Assembly (NCBI GenBank): GCA_002269645.1
Contig: NIVC01002257.1
Location: forward strand, 124,001-188,000
DNA: 64,000 nt
Direction of reading: 5' to 3'
From: Macrostomum lignano
Taxonomy: Eukaryota
In this document: positions 58-64,000 of the stretch, piece after piece
Layout of the letters: each line of letters begins with the position of its first letter
Numbering within the stretch: the first letter of the stretch is position 1
Notes under the pieces: model-generated
Databases searched by the model: none
What the model was told of the DNA's origin: nothing
What the model saw: the letters and a program-made list of their open reading frames with translations, nothing else
Program-made: the position numbers and the translations under genes

Positions 58-1089
58 TTACATTACGATACATCTCCACCTGGCCGACAGCTGAGCTTGG
101 AGCTCTTGATGGCTTCGGAGCAGTTCATTCTGACGAGCTTCTGATTCTCGGAACTTTTCCTCTAGGTTGCGCATGTTTGACGACTGAACCTTGAAAGCTT
201 GGTACTGAGCTTCTAATCTTTCCTCCTTCTCCAGAACCCGGTGCCGTTCCTGGTACATGTCTATCATATCAGAAATGGCGTTAATCATGTCGTCGGAAAA
301 CTGGATTTTCTCCGTTGATGACTCATATACCCTATCGAGCTGACGCAGGTTAGCCGACAAACTATCGATGATTTTAAGCAGTCCGTCGGCCTTCCTGTCC
401 AACTCCTGAACGTCGAGGGTAGTTTTGATCCCCTTGGTAACAGATCCGATTCCAAGTCCTGTGCCAGCTGCTACTCCAGAAGCCAAGGCAGCTGCAGGAG
501 CCCATGTAGCACCCAAAGTGAAAAACCCAGCGATTCCAAGAGCCACGGACACACTGGCAGCAACTGCCATTCCGGCTGTTGCGCCATATCCTTTATTTTT
601 TCGGCTGGAAACCTCTAATTGGGCTTTCTTGTGCTCATCTTCCAGGTTACTTCGCAAATTTTCGGCGCTCTTGATAACTTCTTCAAGACAGGTGCGAAAA
701 CTTTGATATTCCTTTCCAAATTCGTTTGCTGAATCCAGTACTTCATGCAGCTTGTCAAGACAGTCCTTAACTTTCTTTGATGTCTTTTCATGGGTCGCCA
801 CAATTTCCCGTAGAGTTTTATTCATGCTTTTTCCACTACTTTCGAGATTTGAAGCAGCATCTTTGATGGCATCACATTGTGTACCCAAAGAAAGCAAACG
901 GTGCCGAAAATCTTCCAGTAACTCTACGCTTCGGACATCAATTTCGTCAGCGTTTTTAGCAACAGATCGTATGGTTTCAATATCAACTAAGAAAGTTCTG
1001 TTGATACTAATAATGTCATTGCTCAGTTTCAATGCTTCTAGCGTTTTTTTCGCATCAAAAATCAAATCGGACGCTTGAGGCGTGGCCAT
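58..1089 (-). CDS. 343-aa helical protein with Gly/Ala-rich hydrophobic hairpin, C-terminal coiled coil and CaaX box (family member A; APOL/alpha-PFT-like architecture)
   Basis: Uninterrupted ORF from ATG 1089, preceded by an acceptor-like ccatttcag. Contains GYGATAGMAVAASVSVALGIAGFFTLGATWAPAAALASGVAAGTGLGIG and ends RWRCIVM*. Aligns by eye with members B, C and D. Confidence 0.8.
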   Translation of the reverse strand: MATPQASDLIFDAKKTLEALKLSNDIISINRTFLVDIETIRSVAKNADEIDVRSVELLEDFRHRLLSLGTQCDAIKDAASNLESSGKSMNKTLREIVATHEKTSKKVKDCLDKLHEVLDSANEFGKEYQSFRTCLEEVIKSAENLRSNLEDEHKKAQLEVSSRKNKGYGATAGMAVAASVSVALGIAGFFTLGATWAPAAALASGVAAGTGLGIGSVTKGIKTTLDVQELDRKADGLLKIIDSLSANLRQLDRVYESSTEKIQFSDDMINAISDMIDMYQERHRVLEKEERLEAQYQAFKVQSSNMRNLEEKFRESEARQNELLRSHQELQAQLSARWRCIVM

Positions 1090-6883: not shown

Positions 6884-7276
6884 ATGTCGCAAAAAAAGAC
6901 AGGCGCAGCCACGAACGTTATGAACATGATGAGCAACCTAACGACAGCGACTGAAGCTGCTAGCAAAATAGCAAGCACTGCAAGTAGCATCTATGATACT
7001 GTATCAGCTGTCACACAACAATCGCACGATATTCTGACGGAATTGACCAAGGAAGCCGCCAGCATCGCCCAAGCCGAGGTCAGTGATTTTCGAGACGCAA
7101 TGCGAGACACAAATGCTTCTGGAGAAGATCTGAGGTCAAGATGTCTTGAGCTGAGAGAAAAGTGGCAGTCCTTTGAAAATTACATTTACGAGACCTTTGA
7201 ACGAAAGGAAATTAGTCGCGCTGAAGTTCAAAATTGCATTCAGCTGCTGCAGTTAATGCTGGAGAGTGCCGGCAAC
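6884..7276 (+). pseudogene. 5' half (131 codons) of family member B, interrupted by a Chapaev insertion
   Basis: ATG 6884 (TATAAAT near 6768). Reads ...IQLLQLMLESAGN into the element TIR and joins in frame to 10563 when the element is removed. Confidence 0.85.
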
Positions 7277-10200
7277 ACAGCACCCATGGAACATCTTTTA
7301 GGGAGAAAAAAAGTACGAAGCAATCCATTCAACTTTTCTTGTTCCATAGACACCTGTAGATGAAAAAAATGAAAAACAGAAAAAAATTTGCGATAGCTTC
7401 ATGTTTTATTGCACTTTTTGAATTTTCATGTACTTTTAATTGGCAAAACAGGAAGACATTCCATAAAAACTGCCATTTCAGCTTACAGGTCATTAGCGAA
7501 ATAAATTCAGCTACCTTTCTATCCCATACAGCCAAATAAATAACTAAAGACTTGTTTACATTGAAGCTAGTATCTCTGCGAGTCACACACTGTTCAAATT
7601 AAAGTACCACTAGTCTTGCACAAAGTCTAGATTGATTTGAGTATTCAATGATCTACAGAGTAACTAAACCTTTATTTCTGGCTCACATAATCGATAGCAT
7701 TTGATTGGCCAAATCGTTGTACACGCAGCTAAGCTGAATGAAATCAACCAATCGATTGCTTAACTTTAGGCGGCCAGTTTTTAACTTAACAGATGTACAT
7801 CCACCAGACATTTACAATGCTGCACTCGTCTGAAAATTTCATGCCCGCAAGCAGGCCAACTATAAGGTTCAATGAAAATGTACAATCATGCACTACAAAC
7901 TCAGTAAACATCTCACAGTGATAGAAAAATCCACTCTATCCTAGCATAAAACAACGCCAACAAACTTCAAATAAAGTTATATTCTATCATCAGTTTTATA
8001 GCACTTTTGATAGCTCTGCAATGCCTTCAACGGCTTTAACTCATTCGGAGAATCGATTGAAAGTATGCCTGATCTGCTTTAAAAAAGGAGCATCTCATGA
8101 ACCTATTCGTGACGCAAATCTACAACGCATCAATCGAAATTTTATCGAAGATATTGACATCACTGATGAAAGTCTTCCAGCATCTTTGTGCGCTCGGTGT
8201 CGCAAACTTCTTCTTGATGTCGACAGTGGTAGAAAGCCAGTGGATGCTCTGCCCCAACCATATGACTTCTCAAAAGTGAAGCAGACAGCAGTCACACGAC
8301 AGAATCCCCTGTGCCATTGTGATCTGTGTGAAGTCGCCCGGATGACTCCGATTGGTCAGGGGCTTGGCTCTGCCAAAGTTCCGGCTCACCCGATTGGCCG
8401 GCCGAAGAAATCCAACGACCAGCTGCCTGTAGCTTTGCCAGCTAAAATCTGCCGACGCTGCCTTTGCATCCTCCGGCGAGGAGTCAGTCACTGCTGTACC
8501 ATCACTCAACGCAGGGAAAACCTGTGCACAGAGTACTCTGTGGACCAGCGAGGGGCTGAGATGCACGCAGCCAAAGTAATCAAAAGAAAAGCTGTCGATG
8601 CGCACGGTGCTGCTCCAATTCAACTGGCAACTCGTGGGCGTAATCTAACACTCAGTCTCCTAGCCCCATCACAAGCTAAAAACTCGGCTGCTTTTTACGA
8701 TTCGCCGATCTCAGCATCTGAAATGAGCTGCTTTCAGCAGGCGCTGAGTCTAAGCAGACGGCAAACGAGGACTGCAGCGCAATTCTTCCGTAAGTGGAAA
8801 GGGCGGAAGTCAATTGAAGCAGGCCTGGAGTCGAAGTTGCAGCAGCTGGACAGCAGCCTCAGCGAGTATTTTTCGGTGACCGATGCAGAGTTTGAGATCA
8901 GCGGCGGTCAGAAGAAGCGCTGCTCCGTCGTATTCTGCAGGGACCCAGCAGGTCTCATTGATTACATGCTGCAACACCGGAGGGCGCCTTTTGGTTCTGA
9001 GTTCGTTGCAAAAGTTGGAATGGACAGTGGTGGTGATTTTCTGAAAATCTGTCTCAGCCTCATAGTTGACACATCAACTGATGCAAGTGACTTCGAGACT
9101 CAGGCTGCCGATGTCTGCTCAAGCCACTTTGCCGAAGGAGGTGTCAAGAGACTCATGCTACTAGGAATTGTTCAAGGAGTGAAAGAAACGTATGCCAACC
9201 TTAAGACCATGCTGGATCTTTTGAATATGAAAGGCGTCCGATATTACTGCTCGATGGACATGAAGATGGCCAACATCTTCCTTGGGCTTCAGGCATGCAG
9301 CAGCTTGCATCCGTGTCCTTGGTGCGAGTGCAGGCGGAACCTTTTTGGTGATGCGCATCGTGACATCCAGCTGCGGACGCTCGGTGCCATTCGAAGAAAT
9401 GCAGCCCAGTATCAGCAGGCAGCTCGGCAGCATCGGGGCAGTTTGCAGCTTGGAGCTGCCAACTTCAAGAATTGTGTGCATGATCCACTAACAGATCTGC
9501 CTGACGACACCGAGGTTCTAACGATCGTGCCTCCAATGGAACTGCACCTGATGCTGGGAATTACCAACCGGCTGCTGGAAGAACTGGACACGCGACTCCA
9601 AGCGACAAATGACTGTTCGGTGCGCATTGATGACTGGCTTGCTCGACTGGGAGTTCAGCGACAGCCTCAGCATGGCAGGCAGATAAACGGCAATGACTGC
9701 GCAAAGGTGCTGGAGTCAGTAGATCAGTTGGAGCAGATGGTCCGAGACTGCGATGCTTGCCTGGGAATGCCCGTTGTGTTTGCTCTGCGGTGCTTTCGAG
9801 AGGTAAAGAGAACCTGCTTCAGCCTTGAACTGCGCGATGGCTTCGAGACCGCCGTGGCTCACTTTGCTCAGGCTTACGCGGATCTCGGTATTAGCACCAC
9901 GCCGAAGGTGCACGCGCTGATTGACCACGTGGTGCCTTTCCTCTCAAGCGCTGACAACAGGGAAGCCCGACATGGACTAGGCTTTTGGTCTGAGCAAGCT
10001 GGCGAAGCTGTGCATCGCGATTTCAACAGCCTGTGGTGCCGCAGCTACAAAGTTAGTCCTACAAATCCTCAGTATGCACAACAGCTGCTGAAGTGCACTG
10101 TTGCGTACTGCTCGCGGCATTTGTGACCTGCTTTAATAGTAAGAACATTTTCTTTTTCTAAGTCTTTTTTTGTTTGCAATAGCAGATAGAAAAAATGTGT

Positions 10201-10557
10201 CTTTAAGCTATCTATAATATTTGTTTATGGTAAAAACTTATTTAAAAAACACTATTTAAAGTAGCCTAATGCACTGCATATAAGTTTTTTTATCGGCCTG
10301 ATAGTTTAAGTTAAGCAGGTAGCTGAATTTAATACGCTGATGACCTGCAAGCTGAAATGGCAGTTTTTATGGAATGTCTTCCTGTTTTGCCAATTAAAAG
10401 TACATGAAAATTCAAAAGGTGCAATAAAACATGAAGCTATCGCAAATTTTTTTCTGTTTTTCATTTTTTTCATCTACAGGTGTCTATGGAACAAGAAAAG
10501 TTGAATGGATTGCTTCGTACTTTTTTTCTCCCTAAAAGATGTTCCATGGGTGCTGTG
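7276..10557 (+). mobile_element. Intact Chapaev-type (CMC superfamily) DNA transposon, about 3.28 kb
   Basis: 241-bp TIRs (7276-7516 and 10317-10557) starting CACAGCACCCATGG. 4-bp TSD gcaa (7272-7275, 10558-10561), equally readable as 6-bp ggcaac. One long transposase ORF. Confidence 0.88.
8021..10126 (+). CDS. 701-aa Chapaev/Transib/RAG1-related DDE transposase
   Basis: N-terminal H-x7-C-x2-C...LPASLCARC...CHCDLC zinc motif. Core KVGMDSGG (D), SMDMKMANIFLGLQACSSLHPCPWC (D plus CxxC), ELHLMLG, KVHALIDH, SEQAGEAVH (E). Confidence 0.88.
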   Translation: MPSTALTHSENRLKVCLICFKKGASHEPIRDANLQRINRNFIEDIDITDESLPASLCARCRKLLLDVDSGRKPVDALPQPYDFSKVKQTAVTRQNPLCHCDLCEVARMTPIGQGLGSAKVPAHPIGRPKKSNDQLPVALPAKICRRCLCILRRGVSHCCTITQRRENLCTEYSVDQRGAEMHAAKVIKRKAVDAHGAAPIQLATRGRNLTLSLLAPSQAKNSAAFYDSPISASEMSCFQQALSLSRRQTRTAAQFFRKWKGRKSIEAGLESKLQQLDSSLSEYFSVTDAEFEISGGQKKRCSVVFCRDPAGLIDYMLQHRRAPFGSEFVAKVGMDSGGDFLKICLSLIVDTSTDASDFETQAADVCSSHFAEGGVKRLMLLGIVQGVKETYANLKTMLDLLNMKGVRYYCSMDMKMANIFLGLQACSSLHPCPWCECRRNLFGDAHRDIQLRTLGAIRRNAAQYQQAARQHRGSLQLGAANFKNCVHDPLTDLPDDTEVLTIVPPMELHLMLGITNRLLEELDTRLQATNDCSVRIDDWLARLGVQRQPQHGRQINGNDCAKVLESVDQLEQMVRDCDACLGMPVVFALRCFREVKRTCFSLELRDGFETAVAHFAQAYADLGISTTPKVHALIDHVVPFLSSADNREARHGLGFWSEQAGEAVHRDFNSLWCRSYKVSPTNPQYAQQLLKCTVAYCSRHL

Positions 10558-10562
10558 GCAAC

Positions 10563-11240
10563 TGTGGCAAGTGCTACAAAGAGTTCAGAGAGAAACTGAA
10601 TCGTGCTGTTGACGTAGGGTCTCGCCTCGCAGAGCGGTGCAGAGTCGCAGCCGCGGAAAGCAGGTCCGAAGCCTCGACCACGAAGGCTCGCGGATATGGC
10701 GCTGCAGGAGTTCTAGGCGCTGCCGCTCTTGGCTTTCTCACCTTTGCTACAGGAGGCGTCGCTGCGGTTGGAGCTGCTGCAATGGGTGCAGCCGCGGCTG
10801 GCGCGGGAGCCTACACCTACGATAAGGCGAAAAAACTGGAAAAACTGGCTGGTGAGTTTGACGACCAAAGAGGAAAGCTTGATGATGCTCTGCGGGATCT
10901 GAACAGCTTGGGAGATTCCATCACTGGTCTGTTTACCGTCACCGAGAAAATGGTCGAGAACATGGAGATTGCCCTGAGGATCTTCAAGGAGCAGGAACGC
11001 CTGAAGCAAGAGAACGAGGACAATCGAATCAAGAATGAGAAGATGGCTCTGGAAAACGAAAAAATGAAGGAGGAACAGGAAACTCTAAAGCAGGAGGCGG
11101 AAAGAAGGAAGCAAGAAAATGATGAGATGAAGCAACAACAAGAAAGCATGAGACAGAGAAATGAAGAATTGGAAGAGCGGCTCAAGAAGCTGGAAATCGA
11201 AAAAAATAAGAAAAAAAGCAAGGCTTGCCGCAACATGTGA
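10563..11240 (+). pseudogene. 3' half of family member B: hydrophobic hairpin, coiled coil, polybasic tail plus CRNM
   Basis: CGKCYKEFREKL...GYGAAGVLGAAALGFLTFATGGVAAVG...KKNKKKSKACRNM*. The reconstituted empty site gives a 356-aa ORF. Confidence 0.85.
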
Positions 11241-25799: not shown

Positions 25800-26288
<489 letters not shown>

Positions 26289-27061: not shown

Positions 27062-27308
27062 GGTGAGTTCGACGGCATAGGAGGAGAACTCGACAATGCT
27101 CTGGATAGTCTGAGCGATTCGGTGATATACATGTACAGTCGCCGGTTTATTCACGGTCGCCGAAAGTATGGTTAAGAATATGGAGATCGCGATGAAGTTC
27201 GTCAAGGAGAACGATAGGCCGAGAGAGGAGCAGGAAAGCCTGCGAAAAAGAAATGGATAGGAGCTAGAAAGACATCGTGCTTCTGGCGATGCAGCTCCCA
27301 AGAAGTAG
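27062..27308 (+). pseudogene. Pseudogene fragment of the hairpin/coiled-coil family (member D)
   Basis: GEFDGIGGELDNAL../frameshift/..VAGLFTVAESMVKNMEIAMKFVKEND matches member B GEFDDQRGKLDDAL...ITGLFTVTEKMVENMEIALRIFKEQE. Contains an internal stop. Confidence 0.8.
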
Positions 27309-32579: not shown

Positions 32580-33172
32580 ATGGCCAAAGCGCACCAGCTT
32601 GACGCAAAGCTGCGCACTCAAGACGTTGCCCAGGGCGACGCGGCCAACTTTGCCGATTTGCTACTGTCCGAGCCTGTGCTGGCCGGCCTGTCCGAGGCTG
32701 GCTACCGGACACCGTCGCCAATCCAGCTGAAGGCCATCCCGCTGGGCCGGTGCGGCCTGGACCTGGTAGTGCAGTCCAAGGCGGGCACCGGCAAGACCTG
32801 CGTGTTCGCCGTGTTGGCTCTGGAATCGCTGGCGCCAGATTTTGCTAACAACCACCGCCAAGGCGAAGTTGTCGCTGGCGTGCGAGTTCTGGCTCTGTCG
32901 CCCACTCGCGAAGTGGCTCTGCAGAGCCGGCGGGCTATCGAGACCATCGGGCAGCGTCTGGCTGGACTGCGCTGCGGCCTGTTCATCGGCGGCCTCGGCG
33001 CCGGGGTCAAGGAGGCTGAGGCTGAGGCGGCGGTCTGTCAGGTTGCCGTGGGCACGCCCGGCCGCGTACGGCAGCTCATTGAAGCCGGCTGTCTGAAGAC
33101 TGACAGAGTCCGCATGCTGGTGCTCGACGAGGCGGATGCACTGCTTAATGAGTCTTTTCAGCAGGATATTAA
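32580..33172 (+). CDS. DDX20: DEAD-box helicase DDX20/Gemin3, exon 1
   Basis: Q motif FADLLL..PSPIQ, QSKAGTGKT, SPTREVA, GTPGR, LDEAD. Donor aa|gtgaga, phase 2. Confidence 0.85.
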
Positions 33173-33329
33173 GTGAGAGTTGCTTATTTGCTACTTGTTA
33201 GTAGGCTAGCATTTCTTGATAGGGTAACTTGATTCATGGATCTTGATGTAGCATACTTGGAGAATCCGCCTCCCCTTCCTTTGGGGGGGGGGGTATAACC
33301 CCCAAAAAGATTTTAAGATGGAAAATTCC

Positions 33330-33607
33330 CTCTCAGATCAGATGAAGAATCCCCCAGATTCCCAGATGAAAAAAACCCCCAGATCCCAGATGAAGAATCG
33401 CCCCAGCTTTCCAGATGAAGAATCTCCCCAGATTCCGCAGATGAAAAAATCCACCAAATAGACCTAACAGATAAAGAAATCCCCCGATTCCAAGATAAAT
33501 AATCGCCCTAGATTGCCAGATGATGAATCTCCCCAGATTCCCAGATAAAGAATCACCCCAAATTCCCAAATGAAGAAATCTCCCAGATTCCCAGATGAAG
33601 AATCATT
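33330..33607 (+). repeat. About 21-bp minisatellite (cccagattcccagatgaagaat), about 13 copies, DDX20 intron 1
   Basis: Degenerate tandem array; reverse complement of the intron 2 array. Confidence 0.85.
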
Positions 33608-33682
33608 CCAACTTTTCGAGCACTGCATTCCCACCTTCCTCCCACTCACTGATTGCCAACCCCCACTTGCCCTTGTTTGCAG

Positions 33683-34159
33683 CTGTATCTACTGGAAGCT
33701 GCCGCAGAACAAGCAGGTGCTGGCCCTGTCGGCCACCTACCCGGACTCCATGGCCCAGCAGCTGTCGATGTACATGCGCGATCCAACGCTGGTCCGTCTA
33801 AGCGGCGGCCAACTGCTTGGCGTTCGACTCTACTGGCACTCCGTGCCGGACAGCCACCTGCCTAATCTTGTGCTCGAACGGAAAGCTCGAATACTTGGCG
33901 ACTTATTAGCCCAGGTGCAGTTCGGCCAGTGCCTGGTGTTCTCCAACTATCAGGAGCGGGCTAGGGAGCTGTGCCAGCGGCTTGAGGCAGCCGGCTGGCC
34001 GGTGGCCTATCTGGCTGGCCGGCTGCAGCAGTCCGAGCGAATCGGGGCCTACGATCGGCTGCGCGACTTCCGCTGCCGAGTTCTGGTTGCCACCGACGTG
34101 GCCGCCAGAGGCGTCGATGCGGAGAATGTCGATCTGGTGGTTAATTTGGATCTGCCAAG
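33683..34159 (+). CDS. DDX20: DDX20 exon 2 (477 nt)
   Basis: Acceptor ttgtttgcag. N|CIYWKLPQNKQVLALSATYP, VFSN, ATDVAARGVD. Donor ag|gtaaaa. Confidence 0.85.
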
Positions 34160-34314
34160 GTAAAATACAAGTGCTTGTGTAATATCTGACTCACTTTTCT
34201 ATTGTACAATAGTTTAAGGCAAAGATCCATATTCATACTACTTACGTCGTAATTAAGTCGCTTAAATTCAAACCCCAAAAATGATCTTTTCAAAACTGTT
34301 TTGAAACTGTAATA

Positions 34315-34885
34315 AAATCTGGAGAGTTCTCCATTTTAGAATCTATTTAAAGAGGATTCTCCATCTGTTAATCTAGGGGGAATTCTTCATCTGGAAATCT
34401 AGGCGATTCTCCATCTGCGAATCTAGGGGGGATTCTCCATCTGGGAATCTAGGGGGATTCTCCATCTGGGAATCTAGGGGGTTTCTCCCTCTGGGATCTA
34501 GGGGGTTTCTCCATCTGTGAATCTTAGGGGGTTTCTCCATCTGGGAATCTAGGGGGTTTCTCCATCTGGGAATCTAGGGGGTTTCTCCATCTGGGAATCT
34601 AGGGGGGATTCTCCATCTGGGAATCTAGTGAGATTATTCATCAGAAAAACTAGGGAGATTATCTATCTGAAAATCTAGGAGGATTCTTCCTAGGAGGGAT
34701 TCTCCATCTGGGAATCCAAGGGTGATTCTCCATCTGGGAAGCTTAGGGTGATTCTCCATCTGGGAATCTTAGGGTGATTCTCCATCTGGGAATCTAGGGT
34801 GATTCTCCATCTGGGAATCTTAGGGTGATTCTCCATCTGGGAATCTAGGGTGATTCTCCATCTGGGAATCTATTGGGATTCTGCA
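34315..34885 (-). repeat. About 21-bp minisatellite (attctccatctgggaatctaggg), about 26 copies, DDX20 intron 2
   Basis: Same unit as 33330-33607 in the opposite orientation. Confidence 0.88.
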
Positions 34886-35022
34886 ATAGGGAATCCGTAA
34901 AGCACCGACATAGTGAAAGTCTAAGGTGTACTTAACTGAAAGTGTTGAACACTCGCTCCAACAACTAAAGCTACATGTACTGAAGATACTTCTGATACTA
35001 GCTTAACCCATTTGGCCGCCAG

Positions 35023-36244
35023 GGACCACCGCACTCTGTTGCACCGGATCGGCCGGGCTGGCCGCTTCGGCAGCTACGCGGCCGCCGTCAGCCTAGTCGG
35101 CGACGGTCCCGAGCTCCGGCAGCTGCACGAGTTCGAGCGCCTCGCCGGCCTCCGCATGTCGCCGCTGCCGGAGCCGCCGCCGTCGGATTTGGCCAACGCC
35201 CCGCCTGTTGGCGACTCGGCCGCGGCCGCTGCCAGCTTCATTGAGGTGGCCGCCGACTCTGACGACAACGGCGACGACGTTGTGTCAGTGAAATCCGCCG
35301 CTCCGACCGATCGGTCGATGTTCGAATCCGACTCGCCAATCAGACCGCCCAGGCCGCAGAAGCAGTCGGGCGGCAGAAGTGGCAAAGGAAAGCAGAAATT
35401 TAAGCGCGGTCGTCAGCACCGACAGGAGGCCGAAGAATTGCCGCAGGCTGACGATGCGGACGACTGGGCCGCCTTCGAGGCGTCGGCTGGGGCTGCAGCA
35501 GCTTCGTCGGCTGAGGATGCCGAAGTGCTTCGACTGCGAGCTTTGCTGCACGGCGGCGCTGGAAGCTCGAGCGAGACGGCTCCGCAGCCGCAGGTTGCAC
35601 CGCCGGCGCCACAGCCGCAGGTGGCACCGCCAGCGCCGCAGCCAGCAGCACCTGCGCCCATAGCGAGCGCCGACTTTAGTTGGATTGCTGAAGAATCCAG
35701 CGCGCTAGCCGGCCTGCTGAGTGACTGGCTTGATGGTGCGTCGGGCCGTCGGGATTCTGCGGCTAAGATGCCGGCTGATATGCTAGAAGCCCGGCGCATC
35801 ATCGACAAGACGGCAGCTGCTAATAATAGAACCCAGAAGTTGCCGCTGGAGCTGTTGCTATTTCCAGATTCAACTGCAGCTGACTGCCTGCCCGCTGATC
35901 GGCTGCTGGCACTCAATAAGCAAATTCAATGCCTTGCGTGCCGGTCTAGTGGTCATACTGCCGCCCCTACTGAGCCTACTTCCGCCCCTACTGAACCTGC
36001 ATCCGCCCCTGCTGTGCCTGCATCCGCCCCTGCTGTGCCTGCATCCGCCCCAGCAACAACAACAGCAGCAGCAGCAGTCTCTAGCGATCCGCTGTCCCCT
36101 AGCGATCGTCAGCTGCTGCACGAGTTGCTGGCCGCTGATGCCGAGCTGGAGCAGCTCAGGCAACTTGTTGACTGGCATCGGCAGAGCTGCGAACGGGAGT
36201 GGGCGCTTATGGAGCACCTGCGACAACAGCTTTACGAGTATTAA
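35023..36244 (+). CDS. DDX20: DDX20 exon 3: motif VI plus low-complexity C-terminal extension (total 763 aa)
   Basis: Acceptor ccgccag. R|DHRTLLHRIGRAGRFG. Exon lengths 593+477+1222 = 2292 nt, in frame. Confidence 0.82.
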
Positions 36245-42813: not shown

Positions 42814-43721
42814 CATCTGGCCCGCAGCCATGAGCTGGATTCTTCATCTGGCCCGCAGCCATGTGCAGGATTCTTCATCTGGCTCGCAGCCATGCGCAGG
42901 ATTCTTCATCTGGCCCACAGCTATGAGCAGGATTCTTCATCTGGCTCGCAGCCATGAGCTGGATTCTTCATCTGGCCCACAGCTATGAGCTGGATTCTTC
43001 ATCTGGCTCGCAGCCATGAGCTGGATTCTTCATCTGGCTCGCAGCCATGAGCTGGATTCTTCATCTGGCCCACAGCTATGAGCTGGATTCTTCATCTTGC
43101 CCGCAGCCATGAGCTGGATTCTTCATCTGGCCCACAGCTATGAGCAGGATTCTTCATCTGGCCCACAGCTATGAGCAGGATTCTTCATCTGGCCCACAGC
43201 TATGAGCTGGATTCTTCATCTGGCCCACAGCCATGAGCTGGATTCTTCATCTGGCCCACAGCTATGAGCTGGATTCTTCATCTTGCCCGCAGCCATGAGC
43301 TGGATTCTTCATCTGGCTCGCAGCCATGAGCTGGATTCTTCATCTGGCCCACAGCTATGAGCTGGATTCTTCATTTGGCCCACAGCTATGAGCAGGATTC
43401 TTCATCTGGCCCACAGTCATGAGCTGGATTCTTCATCTGGCCCACAGCTATGAGCTGGATTCTTCATCTTGCCCGCAGCCATGAGCTGGATTCTTCATCT
43501 GGCCCGCAGCCATGAGCTGGATTCTTCATCTGGCCCGCAGCCATGAGCTGGATTCTTCATCTGGCCCACAGCCATGAGCTGGATTCTTCATTTGGCCCAC
43601 AGTCATGAGCTGGATTCTTCATCTGGCCCGCAGCCATGAGCTGGATTCTTCATCTGGCCCACAGCCATGAGCTGGATTCTTCATCTGGCCCGCAGCCATG
43701 AGCTGGATTCTTCATCTGGCC
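42814..43721. repeat. 31-bp minisatellite (catctggcccgcagccatgagctggattctt), about 29 copies
   Basis: Direct tandem array with few variants and no unique spacers. Confidence 0.95.
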
Positions 43722-53080: not shown

Positions 53081-53987
53081 CAGGGGCGCCATCGCTACAC
53101 AAGGGGCGCGATTGCTATCCAAAGGGTGCCGTCGCTTTTCAAGGGACGCGATTGCTATCCAAAGGGTGCCGTCGCTTTTCAAGGGACGCGATTGCTATCC
53201 AAAGGGTGCCGTCGCTATTCAGGGGGCGCGATTGCTATCCAAAGGGTGCCGTCGCTATTCAGGGGGCGCGATTGCTATCCAAAGGGTGCCGTCGCTATTC
53301 AAGGGGCGCGATTGCTATCCAAAGGGTGCCGTCGCTATTCAAGGGACGCAACTGCTATCCAAAGGGTGCCGTCGCTATTCAGGGGGCGCGATTGCTATCC
53401 AAAGGGTGCCGTCGCTATTCAGGGGGCGCGATTGCTATCCAAAGGGTGCCGTCGCTATTCAGGGGGCGCGATTGCTATCCAAAGGGTGCCGTCGCTATTC
53501 AGGGGGCGCGATTGCTATCCAAAGGGTGCCGTCGCTATTCAGGGGGCGCGATTGCTATCCAAAGGGTGCCGTCGCTTTTCAGGGGGCGCGATTGCTATCC
53601 AAAGGGTGCCGTCGCTATTCAGGGGGCGCGATTGCTATCCAAAGGGTGCCGTCGCTATTCAGGGGGCGCGATTGCTATCCAAAGGGTGCCGTCGCTATTC
53701 AGGGGGCGCGATTGCTATCCAAAGGGTGCCGTCGCTATTCAGGGGGCGCGATTGCTATCCAAAGGGTGCCGTCGCTTTTCAGGGGGCGCGATTGCTATCC
53801 AAAGGGTGCCGTCGCTTTTCAGGGGGCGCGATTGCTATCCAAAGGGTGCCGTCGCTTTTCAGGGGGCGCGATTGCTATCCAAAGGGTGCCGTCGCTATTC
53901 AAGGGACGCGATTGCTATCCAAAGGGTGCCGTCGCTATTCAAGGGACGCTATCCAAAGCGCGCCATCGCTATTCAAGAGGGCGCCAG
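53081..53987. repeat. 40-bp minisatellite (two related 20-mers), about 22 copies
   Basis: Unit gattgctatccaaagggtgccgtcgctattcagggggcgc; stop-free in all three plus frames. Confidence 0.97.
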
Positions 53988-58304: not shown

Positions 58305-58981
58305 ATGGCATCCGCAGATAGTACCAGTGCTGAAGCCGACGTTTCAAATGTTGAAGCAGAATCAAAGAGAAAAGCCGAACTAGAAGCCGTGTGTGTGATG
58401 GCAGCCGAAGGGTCTCTCAGAGAGCTGAAGTTGAAGATTGAAAGCGGAGCGACGATCGACCGCTTCATGAAAGAGTCGATCGATGGAAGAACGGCGCTAC
58501 ACTGCTGCGCAGCAGCATCGGTGACAGAAGTTCTGGTGAGCACTCAGCTGCACACCCGAATTGCAGAAATTCTGCTCCAAAACGGTGCTGACGCTTTCGC
58601 CAGAGACAAGGATGGCCGATCGGCCCTACACCTGGCAGTGATGTCGTCCAACCCGAGCCTGGTAGACCTGCTACTGACAGCACGTCCTGGCAATCCGAAC
58701 ATCCAGGACATTCGTAGATCTTGGACTCCATTGATGTATGCTGCCAAATGCAAATCATCGACAATAACAAAACTTCTTCTGAAGAACGATGCGAGACACG
58801 ACATCGCCGACAAGGACGGAAACACTGCTCTCATCATCGCGGCAGAGAACCGCAACACGGAAGTTTTTAAACTGCTCGTGAAGCGCGGTGCAGACTTGGA
58901 TCACCGCAACAACAGTGGCGATTCAGCAAAGAGCATTGCCTCCGATCAAAGATGGGAACTCATGAAGAAATGGATTCAAGA
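58305..58981 (+). CDS. Ankyrin-hairpin fusion gene (member C), exon 1: about 6 ankyrin repeats
   Basis: GRTALH, GRSALHLAV, TPLMYAA, GNTALIIAA repeats. The apparent stop gag taa overlaps a perfect donor ga|gtaagt. Confidence 0.85.
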
Positions 58982-59065
58982 GTAAGTTAAAAAGGACTCG
59001 TGTGCTTTTTAGACCACAAAGACAAACAAAACTAAAACTCGGAAAACAATTTACTTTTCATGCAG

Positions 59066-59096
59066 GTATCTTCGTCTCGCTAACAATCAGGAGATG
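59066..59096 (+). CDS. Member C, 31-nt microexon (E|YLRLANNQEM)
   Basis: ttacttttcatgcag|gtatcttcgtctcgctaacaatcaggagatg|gtaagt; phase 2 in, phase 0 out. Confidence 0.7.
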
Positions 59097-59279
59097 GTAA
59101 GTTATCTATCATGCCTTTTCAAGTGAATATTAAACGCAGAAGGCAAACAGACTATATAGGATAAGAAAGAGAGCCTTAAAGCGTTTGGCTTTAAGCTACT
59201 CTTCCTCTAATCGACTACATAAGTAATCGTTTAGCTGGGGTACGAACAACAACAACAAAAAAACAACAGCGAGTTATAA

Positions 59280-60790
59280 CAGGCAAAGATAATGCTGCAG
59301 AGCACGTTTCAGGGCCTGGGTGCGAACGTACGAGCTAGTCCGGGGGATCGGCATCAGCCAGAAGGCACGGCGCGGATGATGCGGCCTGCCAACTGGAGTC
59401 GCCGACGGCGCAAAGGTTTGCTCGGACCAGACAGGTCGGTGCGGCTGTGTCCACTGGTGGCGGTGACTCGCTCGTAGCCGATTTTGAAGGCCAGCTTGCG
59501 CCGCATCGATCTCCTGTTCGAGCAAGTCCGTCGGCGTCCAGGTTTCGGCGTTGCACCAGACCGCTGAGGTATACGAACTGCTGACAGTGGGGAAGCTTTC
59601 TGACCTGCCCGTCAGGGCCTGGCAGAAAACTGCAGTCTTGATGTCGTCTGGCACACAGAGCACGACGGTCTTCTTCGTGATATCCATCAGACCGACGCCC
59701 GCCGCAACGCTCACCAGCTGGTCCAGCTGTCGCTGGGTGCCATCGACGGTCAAGGAAAAGCATGCTGAGCCGCCTCTCTGGTTTGCGTCGACCCACGCAT
59801 CGCTGCATCACTGCAGCAGGAAGCCGTCGTCGTTAGAAGGGAGAGCAGTCCGCAGCACCCAGTCAAGCACCAGGACGTACAGGAACGGCGCAAGCGTATC
59901 TCTCTGAAGCATCCCAGAGGATGTCTCAAAGAAATCTGACGGGCCTTCCGGTGTCAGCACAGAAGCGCTGGTGTGTCATATAGCGCCTTGACACAAAAAA
60001 CCTGCTGTTCTGGCACTTACAGCCCTCACGACCGAGTCGAAAGCCTTCCTGAAGTCAATAAAGAGAGTAATCAGGTTTGACTAGTGTGTCTGCACCCTTC
60101 CTCGATAATTCAGCGAAGAGCCAGGATATGTACCACTGTGCCGCGATGGAGTTCTGCTCAGGCCGCAAATACGGATCCAGCACGGGGCTGAAACCGCGAT
60201 AGCATCATTCGGTCGAACAGCTTCGTATAGCACGAGGCAGATGCCTCGGTGCTCCTCAATCCGTGCGGTGCCCGGCTTCTTCGGAATAACGACAATGTGC
60301 GCTGTGGTCCATTCGATATGTGCCGCCTCGCCGAAAAGCAGGCGGTTCATCACACTGGGGACCTCGCTGGCCACACAGTGGAGTCGCAGCACCTCGTTCG
60401 GACCCAGCGCTTTGCCGCCTGGAGTATCACAACGTCGGCTCCTTTTTTGCGGGCAACGGCGTCCCCGGCGGCAGTCTCCGATCGTTTGGCAGCAGGGGCG
60501 ATGGTGCGTTGATAATGACGGCGAAGAACTCTCGCAGCTCATTTGGAGTGTCGTCAGCCAGGTTGAGCGGGATGTGCGGCTTCCTCACGGTCAGAGCGTT
60601 GATGACAGACAAGGCTACGCGCCCTTTGGCGTCGGGTCCAGCGGCGTGTTGGTGCGGCAGTTGACGGCGCTCACGAAGACGCACAAGCACGTAGTCGAGC
60701 TTCCTCCTGCAGCCCGCGAAGGTCGGAAGTCTGTCAGACTTGAGTTGAGCTTCGCTCGCCTCAGGACCATTAAATGCACCTCAGACATTC
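59280..60790 (-). mobile_element. Degenerate LINE remnant in the member C intron (same family as 12520-14140)
   Basis: RT motifs IVVIPKKPG..HRGI, FIDFRKAFDSV, GMLQRDTLAPFLYVLVLDWVL. The segment GRVALSVINALT..ELREFF is shared with copy 1. Confidence 0.85.
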
Positions 60791-60870
60791 TAACCACAGA
60801 ATGTAAATTAAACGGCATTTATTATTTACAGATCCTGTGCCTGTGGCAAAGACAGAGTCAGACAGAACCT

Positions 60871-60966
60871 TAGGCATTCAGTGCTGGCTCCTTATCTTTA
60901 CAATCGGCGTGGCCTCATGAGGTAAAACTCGTTTCCATTCCAGATTGCTAATTATAGAACTCCTTG
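60871..60966 (-). mobile_element. Half copy (one TIR plus spacer) of the P-like MITE at 5259
   Basis: Near-identical reverse complement of 5259-5354, ending gaactccttg. Confidence 0.8.
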
Positions 60967-62788
60967 ACATGGAGTCTCGTGTTGGTTGACTAAAGTATGG
61001 AGTGCATGTAATTTCCTCCATGGACTAAAGTCGCATTTAGATTGTCAAAAGCGATACTAAAGCATCACAAGCTGGAATATAGAACTGATGATTATTGCGC
61101 TCCTTTACATGCTTTCAGCCTCTTACGGTATGCTAAAACACAGAAAAGTTTATTTTACGAGCTACGAAAGCACGTGCTAACTAAACAAAATTAACGTAAA
61201 CAAATCTGAACGAATATGATTCATTGTACGAGTACAAACCAGGAAAAATGCGCTAAAGTGAAAGGCACAAATGGGAGGAGAGAAATTCCTTATTTGGAAA
61301 TTTGTTATGAAATGAAGGGCACAGGAGAGTTGCAAATTTTAGCTTAACAAATTCAGACGATAACAGCTATAGCAAAATTTTATTGCATGCTGCTGATGCG
61401 ATATCTTTCCATGGTTGTGATATACAAGCACCATGTGTTTTATAACTCTACGTAGCAACTACTACAATACAAAAGTAGCAGAATTACGCCCTTAACAGTA
61501 CGACAATTTATTCTATCATCTTGTCGAACTTTTTGCTGCACCAGAACGGAACAACGCATGCAGACCCTTTCCCCCGCCAAAACAGCAAGCATTAATAGAT
61601 TATGCCAGAATGATGCGGAATGCAATTTTTCTTTAGCAATACAGGCATTTGGATTTTACGTCTATGCGCTCTACTGCTAGTAGAAGCACGAATCGATTTT
61701 CTTTTATTTCTCAACTGTCTCTCAATCCCTCAATCAGTCCATGAATTCAGTTAGCCAGATCTGCATTCTAGTTGTACACCAGGTAGCAAGCGGTGAATTT
61801 CTTAATACAAGCTACAATGATTTTAATGCAACGTCTATTGTTCTGTACCGTTATAGGCAGCGCAGTGTTTGGCGACACACACAAAAAATCGGTTTAGAAA
61901 ATCATTCGGAGACATCTCCGTGTATCTGAGTTTCTTCAATTAGGCGGGCGCGGGGCGCCATGGGCGCCGCCGATCTCTGTGTGTCCTCAATCTCTAAGGC
62001 GAGGGGCCCGCATATTCCATATATATATAGATATAAATATAGCCGCATGCTCCCAGTCTTTGAAATCGGAGATTCACAATTGAACCTGCATGCTGCGCCA
62101 CGGTCGGGTTGCTCTTTGGTAGATCGAAAGATCGCCGACTTAAAGACCTCTCGGAGGGGAGCCCGCATGTGGGAGGTGGGGTGGACAGGATTCGATAGAA
62201 AAAATCGGTGAACAGCATCATGGGGTATTAAGCTGGCATGCATCGAAAAACACAAACTGTTGCCTTGATGAAATAGCCGCTATAATGTGCCGCAAGCAAC
62301 CCACCCCCCGCGGTGCGCCACTGCCGCCTCGTTTGAGTTGCTTCTTCGTTCGCGCCACCCGCTGTCGGCCTTCCCCAATTTCGTTTCTTCCCAGATTTTA
62401 ATCGGGGATCTTAGTCTTAAGCTCATTAAACCCGAGCCGGTGCACTGACAGTTTAACAAATTTATCATTGGAAGACTGAAGAAGCTTTATTTTAGCGAAA
62501 TCTTTTAAGAACCAAAGCGTGGAGATTTAGTGAATTGGGCGGACGTGCATCTCTTTTTGTTATTATTGTATAGTTACGGTTGCTATGCCAACGGTACTTC
62601 CATCTATATTTCCAACTGGGAGCAGGCATGAGGGGAGAATTATTACAAAACTATGAATTGCGGTAGAAAAATTGTTTGCAAAGCAAAAACTAACTTAACA
62701 CACAGGGCGCACACGCATGAGGTGCATAAAAATCACACTATACATACTCGCAGTACACTCTGGCGTTTGTTTTTCCCCATTATTTCAG

Positions 62789-64000
62789 GCAGACACAAAA
62801 CGCTTGTGCAGATTGGCCAGCAAAGGCGAACACGAAGCTATGGGAAATTTGCTCCGAAACAAGCCGTCAATTGTAAGCAGCAAATACCCGCTTTACTCAG
62901 ACCGCAGCGCTCTGCTGTGCGCCGCAGCAGCTTCAAAGCGCCACTACTCCCAGGGCGGTGAGGATCACACGAAATGTGCTGAAATCCTAGTCAGGTTTGG
63001 AGCTGATCTGAACGGCCAAGACTCCAAGTCTAACACGGTCCTGCACCTCTCAGTGAAGTCCAAAAATGATTCTTTGCTCAAGTTTCTACTTGGAAAAGAT
63101 GTCAGAGTTGCTGACAAACGGAATAGTGACAGCAGCACTCCGCTTATGCTTGCCGCCGAATTCGACTACGAACAGCACGCGGAACTCCTGCTTGAGCACG
63201 GTGCGAGAACTGGCTCTGTAGACGAATTGTTTTATCACGCAGCAAAAGAGATTGCAGAATCTGAAGGAAGCGAACGGGTGCTTGAAGTCATGCGCAACTT
63301 TGACCAAAGGCAAAGGGAAAAAGAGAAAGTGAGGGACAGAGAATATTTTTGCGGAGCACAAGTACCTCGATTTGAAAATATTTTTGCTGGCATTCAAGGA
63401 TGCATTCATCAGATCACACATGAAGCAAATACAATTCGAAACAGCGTAAGCCATGCAGTGCAAGAAAGCTATGAAATCTATATGGAAATGCCAGCATATT
63501 TCGACCACAATGCACAGCCACTTCGGAATGTTTTGACAGAAGCAGAAAGGCTGGGAAATGTGTTTCACGAGAAGTGCGAACGCTTGTCACAGCGGTGGGC
63601 ACCAGTGGAACAGAAGGTGCTGCAATTGCTCGGACGTCCGCAATTAATCAACAAGACCGATGTACTGAAGTCTATCAGTGACCTGAGAGAATGCATTCAA
63701 TCGGCCGATGAGTGCAAACACAGCCTCTCACAACTGAAAGAAAAACTGTCAGACGCCGCTCGCCTCAGTCGAGAACTGGCGGAAAAGTGTCGAAAGGAAA
63801 GCAGTGATGTTAACAAGCGGAGAGAGGAAAGGAATCAGGAGATCAGGAATCAGGAATCAGGAACCAGGAATCAGGAGAGAGGAATCTGGAAACAGGCATT
63901 AATTGCCGGCGCAGTTGGTGGAGCTGTAGGAGGCCCTTTAGGATTAATTGCTGGGCTGTGGTTAGGATCTGAAGATGCTGCTACGAGTGCTACGAGTGTG
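62789..64000 (+). CDS. Member C, exon 3 (runs off the window): about 4 ankyrin repeats, helical domain and Gly-zipper hairpin
   Basis: Acceptor ttccccattatttcag and 404 open codons, hand-translated: ADTKRLCRLASKG...NTVLHLSV...TPLMLAA...CIQSADECKHSLSQLKEKLSDAARLSRELAEKCR...ALIAGAVGGAVGGPLGLIAGLWLG. Confidence 0.85.

What the first reader, a model, noticed from the sequence alone, without database searches (positions are those of the whole stretch)
58305..64000. Hidden fusion gene: about 10 ankyrin repeats spliced to the same hairpin effector domain
Seen: the apparent stop of the 226-aa ANK ORF overlaps a GTAAGT donor. A 31-nt microexon (59066-59096) converts phase 2 to phase 0 and joins a phase-0 acceptor at 62789, which opens 404 codons missing from the ORF track. 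After 4 more ANK repeats the protein aligns with member B across its N-domain (VSHAVQESYEI vs VSAVTQQSHDI; CERLSQRW vs CLELREKW; CIQSA..LKEKL..LAEKCR vs LESA..FREKL..LAERCR) and then enters a Gly zipper AGAVGGAVGGPLGLIAG. The two ANK blocks share an unusual insert, AL.C.AAAS-x10-HT..AEIL, so the ANK module was duplicated. Established: repeat-sensor plus effector fusions are typical of immune receptors such as NLRs. Inference: a one-polypeptide sensor-executioner in which ANK repeats bind a ligand or autoinhibit a membrane-damaging domain.
Basis: partly seen in the sequence, partly recalled or inferred. Interest (0 to 1): 0.85.

Follow-up and report, generated by a model that had tools for sequence, protein, structure and literature searches.

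The report
Ankyrin repeats fused to ApoL-like domain
A flatworm (Macrostomum lignano) gene that current annotation mostly misses puts ankyrin repeats in front of a distant relative of the membrane-inserting apolipoprotein L domain; the fusion is real in the DNA, but whether the upstream ankyrin exon is spliced onto it has no transcript support yet.

Summary
GTAAGT (58982-58987) overlaps the TAA of the 226-aa ankyrin ORF. A 31-nt microexon (59066-59096) restores the frame. The acceptor at 62789 opens 404 codons that run to the window end.

That last exon encodes four ankyrin repeats and the "hairpin effector" N-domain in one uninterrupted frame, so the ankyrin-effector fusion does not depend on splicing. 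The post-ankyrin domain is homologous to member B (BLASTP E 6e-12). The whole flatworm family is a remote relative of apolipoprotein L (profile-profile 95%, E 4e-8), although Pfam's ApoL model does not hit it directly.

The join to the upstream ankyrin exon is probable (about 0.6-0.7). The microexon is the only good frame-restoring exon, and none as good appeared in 300 shuffles. 62789 is the best acceptor in the interval.

No transcript was found. The only database model (UniRef, M. lignano, 349 aa) joins the two ankyrin blocks, but differently, and it skips the effector.

A serious rival is spliced-leader trans-splicing at 62789, because the M. lignano leader ends in ATG and would be in frame.

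The "sensor-executioner" reading is speculation. The C-terminus lies outside the window.

The parts
58305..58981 (+). Exon 1 of the proposed gene: start codon and first ankyrin module (N-cap, four canonical repeats, C-cap). It would end in phase 2 at the donor.
   Evidence: ORF and translation; Pfam Ank 7e-29 and Ank_2 4e-27; AF2 pLDDT 85-97 over most of the block.
58982..59065 (+). Proposed intron 1 (84 nt), GTAAGTTA...TTTTCATGCAG. Its first codon-frame TAA is the apparent stop of the 226-aa ORF.
   Evidence: Sequence; donor score 3.2 and acceptor score 3.7 on a generic scale.
59066..59096 (+). Proposed 31-nt microexon encoding (E)YLRLANNQEM. It converts phase 2 to phase 0 and ends ...GAGATG|GTAAGTTA.
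   Evidence: It is the only good frame-restoring internal exon; 0 of 300 shuffles were as good. In the AF2 model it lies inside one continuous helix (residues 218-247, pLDDT 65-80). No transcript evidence.
59097..62788 (+). Proposed intron 2 (3692 nt). It carries an antisense degenerate LINE-like fragment and a short dispersed repeat. ATTAAA at 59129 is a possible alternative poly(A) signal for an ankyrin-only transcript.
   Evidence: 59368-59850 matches 13455-14087 on the opposite strand at about 70%, and 60871-60966 matches 5259-5354 at 94%. The RT-like motif VIPKKPG appears in the minus-strand ORF 60081-60542, with no Pfam hit. Poly(A) motifs.
62789..63337 (+). Exon 3, first part: second ankyrin module (N-cap, three canonical repeats, C-cap) and a linker helix. 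It starts at the acceptor ttatttcag|GCAGAC.
   Evidence: Pfam Ank_2 1e-17 and Ank 4e-12; 99% identical to residues 158-339 of UniRef model P0001; best acceptor in the interval.
63338..63904 (+). Exon 3, second part: helical N-domain of the ApoL-like 'effector', in the same reading frame as the ankyrin repeats.
   Evidence: BLASTP to reconstructed member B E 6e-12 over 132 aa. hhalign to the family gives 86.7%, E 4.4e-6. The family including the target against the ApoL-positive set gives 95%, E 4e-8. AF2 predicts long helices with pLDDT 63-87.
63830..63896 (+). Heptanucleotide microsatellite (AGGAATC x 9.4) inside the coding sequence, encoding ...ERNQEIRNQESGTRNQERG... just before the hairpin. 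It is an insertion relative to member B.
   Evidence: TRF; gap in the family alignment.
63905..64000 (+). Start of the glycine-zipper hydrophobic hairpin (ALIAGAVGGAVGGPLGLIAGLWLG...). The window ends here, so the rest of the hairpin and the C-terminus are unknown.
   Evidence: Motif scan; aligns with the hairpin columns of the family; weak Pfam C19orf12 glycine-zipper hit, E 0.056.
58..1089 (-). Member A: stand-alone ApoL-like paralogue, 343 aa in a single exon, ending in the CaaX box CIVM.
   Evidence: ORF. phmmer finds M. lignano hypothetical proteins, sheep APOL3-like (2e-5) and the ApoL-positive P0040 (3e-7). AF2 predicts five long helices with an unresolved hairpin at 167-220.
6884..11240 (+). 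Member B: stand-alone ApoL-like paralogue ending in the CaaX box CRNM. Its single coding exon (6884-7275 plus 10562-11240) is split by a 3.28-kb transposon.
   Evidence: 241-nt terminal inverted repeats at 7276-7516 and 10317-10557. GCAA flanks both sides, and removing 7276-10561 restores a 356-aa ORF.

Best explanation
The window comes from the flatworm Macrostomum lignano. Its last 1.2 kb is a large coding exon of a gene that is absent from the protein sets searched except for one truncated model.

Shown: in one uninterrupted frame this exon encodes a self-capped block of four ankyrin repeats, a linker helix, and a divergent apolipoprotein-L-like (ApoL-like) domain. That domain has about 170 helical residues followed by a glycine-zipper hydrophobic hairpin, where the window stops. 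Two other genes in the window (A and B) encode the same domain without ankyrin repeats. They add a C-terminal coiled coil and a CaaX prenylation box.

Inferred, probability about 0.65: the upstream 226-aa ankyrin ORF is not a complete gene. It is exon 1, spliced through an 84-nt intron, a 31-nt microexon and a 3.7-kb transposon-bearing intron onto this exon. The product would be at least 640 aa with two tandem ankyrin modules.

Inferred from family knowledge, probability about 0.4: like vertebrate APOLs, the domain inserts its hairpin into a membrane from the cytosolic side and forms a channel or otherwise perturbs the membrane. The ankyrin repeats would then act as a protein-binding module that targets or restrains it.
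For: Organism: the best hit is a 99%-identical UniRef M. lignano protein, and the family hits are M. lignano BOX15_ proteins.

Fusion in one exon: 404 open codons, with Pfam Ank at residues 58-142 followed by the effector.

Homology of the effector: member B E 6e-12 and the family profile E 4.4e-6.

ApoL link: member A hits sheep APOL3-like (Pfam ApoL 368 bits) at E 2e-5 and P0040 (Pfam ApoL 1e-19) at E 3e-7 in a library of 1.8 billion proteins. hhalign of the family against P0040 gives 95.7%, E 8e-9. The family including the target against the ApoL set gives 95%, E 4e-8 over 137 columns spanning the pre-hairpin helix, the hairpin and the next helix.

Splicing: the stop lies inside a phase-2 GTAAGT, which always creates xxG|TAA. 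The microexon is unique and absent from 300 shuffles. The best acceptor is at 62789 and is in frame. P0001 independently places both ankyrin blocks in one CDS. AF2 models the junction as one continuous helix.
Against: No transcript-derived protein covers either junction or the effector, and exact look-ups found no annotated gene. P0001 omits the microexon, and its junction (SAKSI|ADTKRL) has no GT donor in this window. It also removes the effector through a frame-shifting GTGAGG...CAG intron.

Each ankyrin block has its own N- and C-caps, as tandem duplicate genes would. ATTAAA at 59129 could end an ankyrin-only mRNA. The acceptor TTTCAG|G fits the M. lignano trans-splice motif, and the spliced leader ends in ATG, which would be in frame (PMC8629364).

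Pfam's ApoL model does not hit any window protein. The fold search found nothing significant. Splice scores used a generic metazoan matrix, not an M. lignano one. A frameshift-prone 7-nt microsatellite sits in the coding sequence.
Confidence: 0.6

Rival explanations
1. There are two separate tandem-duplicate genes. The first is an ankyrin-only gene that really ends at TAA 58983-58985. The second is an independent ankyrin + ApoL-like gene whose first exon starts at 62789 and receives the spliced leader in trans. The leader's terminal ATG (or Met18, HEAMGNLL) serves as the start codon, giving M-ADTKRLCRL...
For: About 30% of M. lignano genes are trans-spliced. The leader ends ...TTGCATG, and the acceptor motif is [T/C]TNCAG, which TTTCAG|G matches (PMC8629364). 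Flatworm leader AUGs can initiate translation (PMC9851317). ATG|GCA GAC is in frame. Both ankyrin blocks are self-capped paralogues. ATTAAA lies 145 nt after the stop. The intervening 3.8 kb is partly repeats, as in repeat-inflated operon spacers.
Against: It leaves three features as coincidences: a stop codon embedded in GTAAGT, an 84-nt intron-like AT-rich segment ending in a good acceptor, and a frame-restoring 31-nt segment ending in a perfect donor. No such exon appeared in 300 shuffles. A strong donor at 59097 with no partner would be unusual. P0001 joins the two blocks.
Confidence: 0.3
2. The locus is a decaying or unexpressed duplicate. The open frame is a recent relic and no functional ankyrin-ApoL-like protein is made.
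For: The effector part has no homologue or annotated protein in 5.8 billion sequences. The GenBank M. lignano annotation in the collection has no protein for it. The family here is being hit by transposons: member B is split and a fragment lies at 27135-27254. A 7-nt microsatellite sits inside the coding sequence. The target departs from several family-conserved residues.
Against: 404 codons remain open. The chance of that for random sequence is about (61/64)^404, or 4e-9, which is my own arithmetic. The frame survives the microsatellite, and both the ankyrin and effector parts still give confident helical AF2 predictions. A 99%-identical second copy is modelled as a gene (P0001).
Confidence: 0.1
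3. The true product is the ankyrin-only protein of the UniRef model P0001. The two ankyrin blocks are joined, but the ApoL-like part is removed by a 440-nt intron (63329-63768), ending ...REKEK-SRTGGKVSKGKQ*.
For: P0001 has exactly this structure, and the GTGAGG donor and ctcag acceptor are canonical in the window.
Against: The removed segment is an open frame homologous to member B. The donor is weaker (3.7) than the others. The splice shifts the frame to a stop after 12 codons. P0001's other two junctions are non-canonical here, which suggests a model forced around errors in an older assembly; that last point is an inference.
Confidence: 0.07

Closest known systems
Apolipoprotein L family (Pfam PF05461; vertebrate APOL1-6, interferon-induced membrane-inserting channel or detergent-like proteins)
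   Same: Same order of elements: a helical N-part, a conserved helix of the type [F/Y]xx[F/L][K/R]xxL...L..LA, a Gly/Ala-rich hydrophobic hairpin of about 40 residues, then further helices or a coiled coil. Profile-profile similarity is 95%, E 4e-8, and phmmer hits sheep APOL3-like at 2e-5.
   Different: There is no direct Pfam ApoL match, and identity is about 15-25%. Members A and B carry a C-terminal CaaX box; to my knowledge mammalian APOLs do not have one. The target has N-terminal ankyrin repeats, an architecture I found in none of the hits or the searched literature. Channel activity is untested.
Macrostomum lignano hypothetical proteins BOX15_Mlig027034g1/g2, Mlig013608g1 and Mlig028092g1 (PAA93849.1, PAA75889.1, PAA93855.1, PAA78324.1)
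   Same: These are the nearest named relatives of members A and B, at 281-323 aa with the same helical-hairpin-helical layout.
   Different: They have no ankyrin repeats, they are unannotated as to function, and some lack the CaaX box.
UniRef ANK_REP_REGION domain-containing protein of M. lignano (P0001, 349 aa)
   Same: 99% identical to both ankyrin blocks, and it joins them in one protein.
   Different: It lacks the first 31 residues, 23 residues of repeat 1, the last 14 residues of the ankyrin ORF, the microexon and the whole ApoL-like part. It is therefore an incomplete model of this gene or of a second copy.
ClyA / AhlC-type alpha-helical pore-forming toxins
   Same: Long helical bundle with a central hydrophobic hairpin. 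These proteins appear among the top fold matches to the member A model.
   Different: The matches are not significant (E 0.02-0.1, TM about 0.25-0.3), and generic designed helical bundles score equally well. This is a loose analogy only.
Repeat-sensor plus executioner immune proteins (NLRs, and fungal HeLo/HET-S-type NLR partners)
   Same: A conceptual resemblance only: a repeat domain sits next to a putative membrane-targeting domain in one polypeptide.
   Different: There is no NACHT, NB-ARC or other STAND NTPase, and no HeLo, CARD, PYD or TIR domain. Ankyrin repeats are general protein-binding modules.

Membership tests
Ankyrin-repeat proteins (PF00023 / PF12796) | Tandem 33-residue helix-turn-helix repeats matching the Pfam models above the gathering score | tested here: met
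   Block 1: Ank 98.7 bits and Ank_2 94.9 bits. Block 2: Ank_2 64.8 bits and Ank 46.1 bits. The AF2 helix-pair pattern agrees.
Apolipoprotein L (PF05461) | Match to the Pfam ApoL model at or above the gathering score | tested here: not met
   No ApoL hit at E <= 1 for the target exon, member A or member B.
Apolipoprotein L (PF05461) | Significant remote homology to proteins that do match the Pfam model | tested here: met
   Member A against sheep APOL3-like P0044 gives E 2e-5, and against P0040 (ApoL 71 bits) E 3e-7. hhalign gives 95.7%, E 8e-9 and 95%, E 4e-8. A direct comparison of the family with P0044 alone was weak (24.6%).
Apolipoprotein L (PF05461) | Helical domain, then a hydrophobic helical hairpin, then a C-terminal helix or leucine zipper | tested here: inconclusive
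   Members A and B have this layout. The target is cut by the window end 26 residues into the hairpin.
Apolipoprotein L (PF05461) | Membrane insertion with cation-channel or membrane-disrupting activity | not testable with these tools
   Needs expression and a bilayer or toxicity assay.
Window family A/B ('hairpin effector' proteins) | Collinear sequence similarity of the post-ankyrin domain to members A and B | tested here: met
   Member B E 6e-12, 26% identity over 132 aa. Family profile E 4.4e-6. Member A alone is not significant (E 5.5).
CaaX-prenylated proteins | C-terminal Cys-aliphatic-aliphatic-X | not testable with these tools
   Members A (CIVM) and B (CRNM), and relatives P0043 (CSVL) and P0041 (CAIL), have it. 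The target's C-terminus lies beyond base 64000, and no look-up reached the flanking DNA.
NLR / STAND immune receptors | Central NACHT or NB-ARC NTPase domain | tested here: not met
   No such Pfam domain in either exon product.
ClyA-family alpha pore-forming toxins | Significant fold similarity to ClyA, Hbl, Nhe or Ahl structures | tested here: not met
   Foldseek best E values are 0.017-0.1 with TM 0.25-0.3, no better than designed helical bundles. The model has mean pLDDT 70 and an unresolved hairpin.
Single spliced gene (three-exon model) | Transcripts spanning 58981|59066 and 59096|62789 | not testable with these tools
   No transcript-derived protein was found in the collections. Only sequence signals support the join, plus one discordant automated model.

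The most novel reading that the evidence does not exclude
The gene encodes a one-polypeptide, cell-autonomous defence or death effector. Two ankyrin modules would hold an ApoL-like membrane-permeabilising domain inactive until a ligand or pathogen factor binds. It would belong to a flatworm immune gene cluster that also holds stand-alone prenylated ApoL-like proteins and a giant URGCP/GVIN-type GTPase. This would be an invertebrate counterpart of the interferon-induced APOL and large-GTPase arsenal of vertebrates.
Probability: 0.12. Interest if true: 0.75.

Novelty: new variant of a known kind. Interest (0 to 1): 0.5.

Why it matters
APOL proteins are known mainly from vertebrates, where they act as interferon-induced channel-forming or bacteriolytic effectors. 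Their regulation and deep evolutionary origin are poorly understood.

This window adds three things. First, it shows a divergent ApoL-like family in a basal flatworm. Second, some members carry CaaX boxes. Third, one member is fused to ankyrin repeats. Ankyrin repeats plus an ApoL-like domain is an architecture I did not find in the hits or the searched literature.

M. lignano is transgenic-tractable (PMC5730564), so regulation of an ApoL-type domain by an attached protein-binding module could be tested there.

In practical terms, the locus is an annotation gap. The only database model is truncated and mis-spliced. It also shows how phase-2 GTAAGT "stops", microexons and spliced-leader acceptors can hide genes in this genome.

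Tried and rejected
- tblastn of the effector against the window found no significant paralogue (E 0.4-0.9). The cause was member B being split by a transposon; after reconstruction the similarity is clear.
- A word-indexed search of 5.8 billion proteins with the effector alone gave zero hits.
- Searches with exon 3 and with the ANK1 + microexon + junction peptide found only P0001 and generic ankyrin proteins, so nothing tests the microexon.
- Exact-product look-ups for P0001, the 226-aa ORF, the neighbouring 311-aa ORF and member A found nothing, so I could not reach DNA beyond base 64000. One search used wrong coordinates and was repeated.
- The locus around P0039 (L001) shows no ankyrin neighbour.
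- The Pfam scan gave no family for the effector, only noise and a weak C19orf12 glycine-zipper hit.
- A profile search of PDB sequences returned only generic helical proteins such as apolipoprotein A-I and designed bundles, and no APOL1.
- Foldseek of the member A model against the PDB found nothing significant.
- Rfam found no RNA family in the window.
- Pfam found no RT domain in the intronic minus-strand ORFs. The LINE assignment rests on the VIPKKPG motif and the repeat at 13.4-14.1 kb.
- I considered a signal peptide from the in-frame upstream ATG (MRCIKITLYILAVHSGVCFSPLFQ). I rejected it because the hydrophobic stretch is the translated polypyrimidine tract of the acceptor, and ankyrin proteins are cytosolic.
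- I considered an NLR and rejected it (no NTPase domain).


Full report
**What is in the sequence.**
- The region 58305-64000 was read directly.
- The ORF 58305-58985 encodes 226 aa with four Pfam ankyrin matches (Ank 7e-29).
- Its stop codon TAA (58983-58985) is the second to fourth base of GTAAGT (58982-58987). If this hexamer is a donor, the exon ends at 58981 in phase 2.
- Eighty-four bases downstream, after ttttcatgcag, lies a 31-nt segment (59066-59096). It ends ...GAGATG and is followed by a second GTAAGTTA.
- With the two carried bases it reads EYLRLANNQEM and returns the frame to phase 0.
- At 62789, after gtttttccccattatttcag, a frame opens that stays free of stops for 404 codons up to the last base of the window. 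It is missing from the ORF list only because that tool drops ORFs that run off the end.

**More than chance?**
- GTAAGT is not enriched in the window (19 observed, 18.8 expected). Only two copies lie in the last 6 kb, both extended to GTAAGTTA and 115 nt apart.
- I enumerated every internal exon between 58990 and 62770 that has acceptable acceptor and donor scores (generic metazoan matrix), is stop-free, and converts phase 2 to phase 0. Only the microexon and one much weaker candidate appear.
- None of 300 block-wise shuffles of the interval produced a candidate as good.
- Among all AG sites in the interval, 62789 has the best acceptor score (4.6). It is the only one followed by a long open frame.
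- A phase-2 GTAAGT donor always creates an in-frame TAA. A genuine TAA stop is flanked by G and GT only about once in 64 times by chance; this figure is my own arithmetic.
- The splice signals are therefore real features, not the product of searching many paths.

**Organism and existing annotation.**
- The best database hit to either ankyrin block is P0001, a 349-aa UniRef "ANK_REP_REGION domain-containing protein" of Macrostomum lignano. It is 99% identical.
- Relatives of member A are M. lignano BOX15_ hypothetical proteins. The window is therefore M. lignano DNA.
- P0001 matters because an independent automated pipeline put both ankyrin blocks in one CDS. It is a poor model of this sequence, though:
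  - It joins ...DSAKSI directly to ADTKRL..., where the window has no GT donor.
  - It deletes 23 residues of the first repeat, with boundaries that are not GT-AG here.
  - It removes the whole post-ankyrin domain through a canonical but frame-shifting intron (63329-63768) that ends the protein 12 codons later.
- I read P0001 as a model of a second copy, or of an error-containing older assembly. This is an inference.
- No other protein in 5.8 billion clusters matches either block closely, and none carries the microexon peptide.
- Exact look-ups for P0001, the 226-aa ORF, a neighbouring ORF and member A found no annotated gene. The flank beyond base 64000 could not be obtained.

**The fusion that needs no splicing.**
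- Ankyrin repeats and this domain are therefore encoded in one polypeptide whatever happens upstream.
- The two ankyrin blocks are paralogous (38% identity, E 8e-11). They share the insert AL.C.AAAS-x10-HT..AEIL in their first repeat.
- Each block has its own N-terminal and C-terminal capping units.

**What the post-ankyrin domain is.**
- A first tblastn against the window was not significant, because member B is split.
- Member B's coding exon is interrupted by a 3.28-kb element with 241-nt terminal inverted repeats (7276-7516 and 10317-10557), flanked by GCAA on both sides.
- Removing 7276-10561 restores a 356-aa ORF ending in CRNM.
- Against this reconstructed protein the target domain gives BLASTP E 6e-12 (26% identity over 132 collinear residues). 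The match runs from VSHAVQESYEI/VSAVTQQSHDI to LAEKCR/LAERCR.
- Against a profile of eight family members it gives 86.7% probability, E 4.4e-6. Member A alone is not significant.
- An exhaustive phmmer search of 1.8 billion representatives with member A found only eight proteins:
  - M. lignano hypothetical proteins;
  - two short Logan-assembled sequences;
  - a chimeric 1171-aa model;
  - P0040, which matches Pfam ApoL at 1e-19;
  - sheep apolipoprotein L3-like (Pfam ApoL 368 bits), at E 2e-5.
- Profile-profile comparison gives 95.7%, E 8e-9 for the family against P0040.
- It gives 95%, E 4e-8 for the family including the target against an alignment of ApoL-positive proteins.
- The matched 137 columns cover the helix before the hairpin (YQSFRTCL in member A, YQSFKTRL in P0040), the Gly/Ala-rich hairpin and the next helix.
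- Pfam's own ApoL model does not hit any window protein.
- I therefore call the domain ApoL-like: a remote relative, not a demonstrated family member.
- AF2 models member A as five long helices with an unresolved hairpin at 167-220 (mean pLDDT 70).
- Foldseek against the PDB gives nothing significant. ClyA and AhlC appear only at E 0.02-0.1, among designed helical bundles.
- A sequence-profile search of the PDB returned only generic helical proteins.

**Is the upstream ankyrin exon part of the same gene?**
- Evidence for:
  - the stop embedded in a phase-2 donor;
  - the unique microexon;
  - the best acceptor being in frame;
  - the P0001 precedent;
  - the AF2 model of the 640-aa fusion (mean pLDDT 76.5), which runs one continuous helix (218-247, pLDDT 65-80) from the C-cap of block 1 through the microexon into the N-cap of block 2. 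This mirrors the long helix that follows block 2 (398-423).
- Evidence against:
  - no transcript evidence;
  - self-capped blocks that look like tandem duplicates;
  - an ATTAAA 145 nt after the stop;
  - the biology of this species, covered under trans-splicing below.
- Trans-splicing in M. lignano:
  - About 30% of M. lignano genes receive a 35-nt spliced leader that ends ...TTGCATG.
  - Trans-splice acceptors carry [T/C]TNCAG.
  - Operon spacers are inflated by repeats (PMC8629364; PMC5730564).
  - TTTCAG|GCAGAC fits the motif.
  - The leader's ATG would be in frame, giving M-ADTKRL...
  - Such leader AUGs can start translation in flatworms (PMC9851317 citing Cheng et al. 2006).
  - The microexon also ends ATG|GTAAG, so both routes give Met-Ala-Asp-Thr.
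- My estimates:
  - about 0.65 that the cis-spliced three-exon mRNA exists, possibly alongside a trans-spliced short form;
  - about 0.3 that the genes are separate;
  - about 0.1 that the locus is not expressed at all.

**Mechanism.**
- Shown: the domain order, the homology, the glycine zipper (ALIAGAVGGAVGGPLGLIAGLWLG), and the CaaX boxes of the stand-alone paralogues (CIVM, CRNM; relatives CSVL, CAIL).
- Inferred from what is established for vertebrate APOLs: the hairpin inserts into membranes and the protein forms a cation channel or disrupts the bilayer.
- The CaaX boxes argue for action at the cytosolic face of membranes.
- The ankyrin modules would then provide protein binding for targeting or for holding the domain inactive.
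- Nothing here shows ligand sensing, autoinhibition or toxicity. There is no NTPase domain, so the NLR analogy is only conceptual.

**Context.**
- The window also holds a 1874-aa single-exon ORF with URGCP-like GTPase domains (296 bits), a fragment of a further family member at 27135-27254, and several transposons.
- ApoL-like genes next to a giant GTPase recall the interferon-induced effectors of vertebrates. This is an observation, not evidence of shared regulation.

**Verdict.**
The ankyrin-effector fusion is real at the DNA level, the 10-repeat three-exon form is probable but unverified, and the sensor-executioner function is speculative.
- The domain belongs to a known kind (ApoL-like) in a new architecture.

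Noticed in passing
window 7276-10561 (+), inside member B: A 3.28-kb DNA transposon with 241-nt terminal inverted repeats (98% complementary) and a GCAA target-site duplication interrupts the single coding exon of member B. It carries a 701-aa ORF (8021-10126) with no Pfam family. Precise removal restores a 356-aa ORF, so the insertion is probably recent.
   Followed up: yes
window 16040-21664 (-): A single 1874-aa ORF with URGCP-like GTPase (296 bits) and URGCP domains, i.e. a giant GVIN/URGCP-type GTPase. It lies between the ApoL-like genes. In vertebrates both protein kinds are interferon-induced.
   Followed up: partly
window 63830-63896 (+): A heptanucleotide microsatellite (AGGAATC x 9.4) lies inside the coding sequence just before the hairpin. 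Because 7 is not a multiple of 3, a change in copy number would shift the frame. A 9-nt repeat (TGCTACGAG x 2.2) follows at 63979-63998.
   Followed up: partly
window 27135-27254 (+): An isolated 40-codon fragment is 50% identical to residues 250-289 of member B (tblastn E 2e-7). It looks like a relic of a further family member, with no open frame around it.
   Followed up: partly
window 59097 versus the M. lignano spliced leader: The microexon ends ...GAGATG|GTAAG, the same ATG|GTAAG as the 3' end of the M. lignano spliced-leader exon (...TTGCATG|GTAAG, PMC8629364). Cis- and trans-splicing onto 62789 would therefore both give Met-Ala-Asp-Thr.
   Followed up: no
window 59368-59850 (-) and 13455-14087 (+); also 60871-60966 versus 5259-5427: Degenerate LINE-like repeat copies (about 70% identical; RT-like VIPKKPG motif in the ORF 60081-60542 minus strand) and a short 94%-identical dispersed repeat. 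Both lie in the proposed 3.7-kb intron. Pfam found no RT domain.
   Followed up: partly
window 1387-2505 (-): An intact 372-aa mariner/Mos1-type transposase ORF (HTH_48 6e-12, partial DDE) sits directly next to member A.
   Followed up: partly
window 53084-53986, 42814-43721, 25790-26288: Three large simple arrays: a 40-nt satellite x 21.6 (open in three frames, which produces spurious ORFs of over 300 aa), a 31-nt satellite x 29, and (AGT)166, which produces a poly-Thr 'ORF' on the minus strand.
   Followed up: partly
window 32580-36244 (+): Several exon-sized ORFs carry DEAD-box helicase motifs (VLDEADALL, SAT, HRIGRAGR), separated by 25-nt tandem-repeat arrays in what look like introns. I identified these by eye only, not by a family search.
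   Followed up: no
protein P0041 (MetaClust, 1171 aa): A family member (CaaX-type CAIL motif internal to the model) appears fused to an aminotransferase-like N-terminus and a long low-complexity tail. This is probably a chimeric gene model rather than a real architecture.
   Followed up: no
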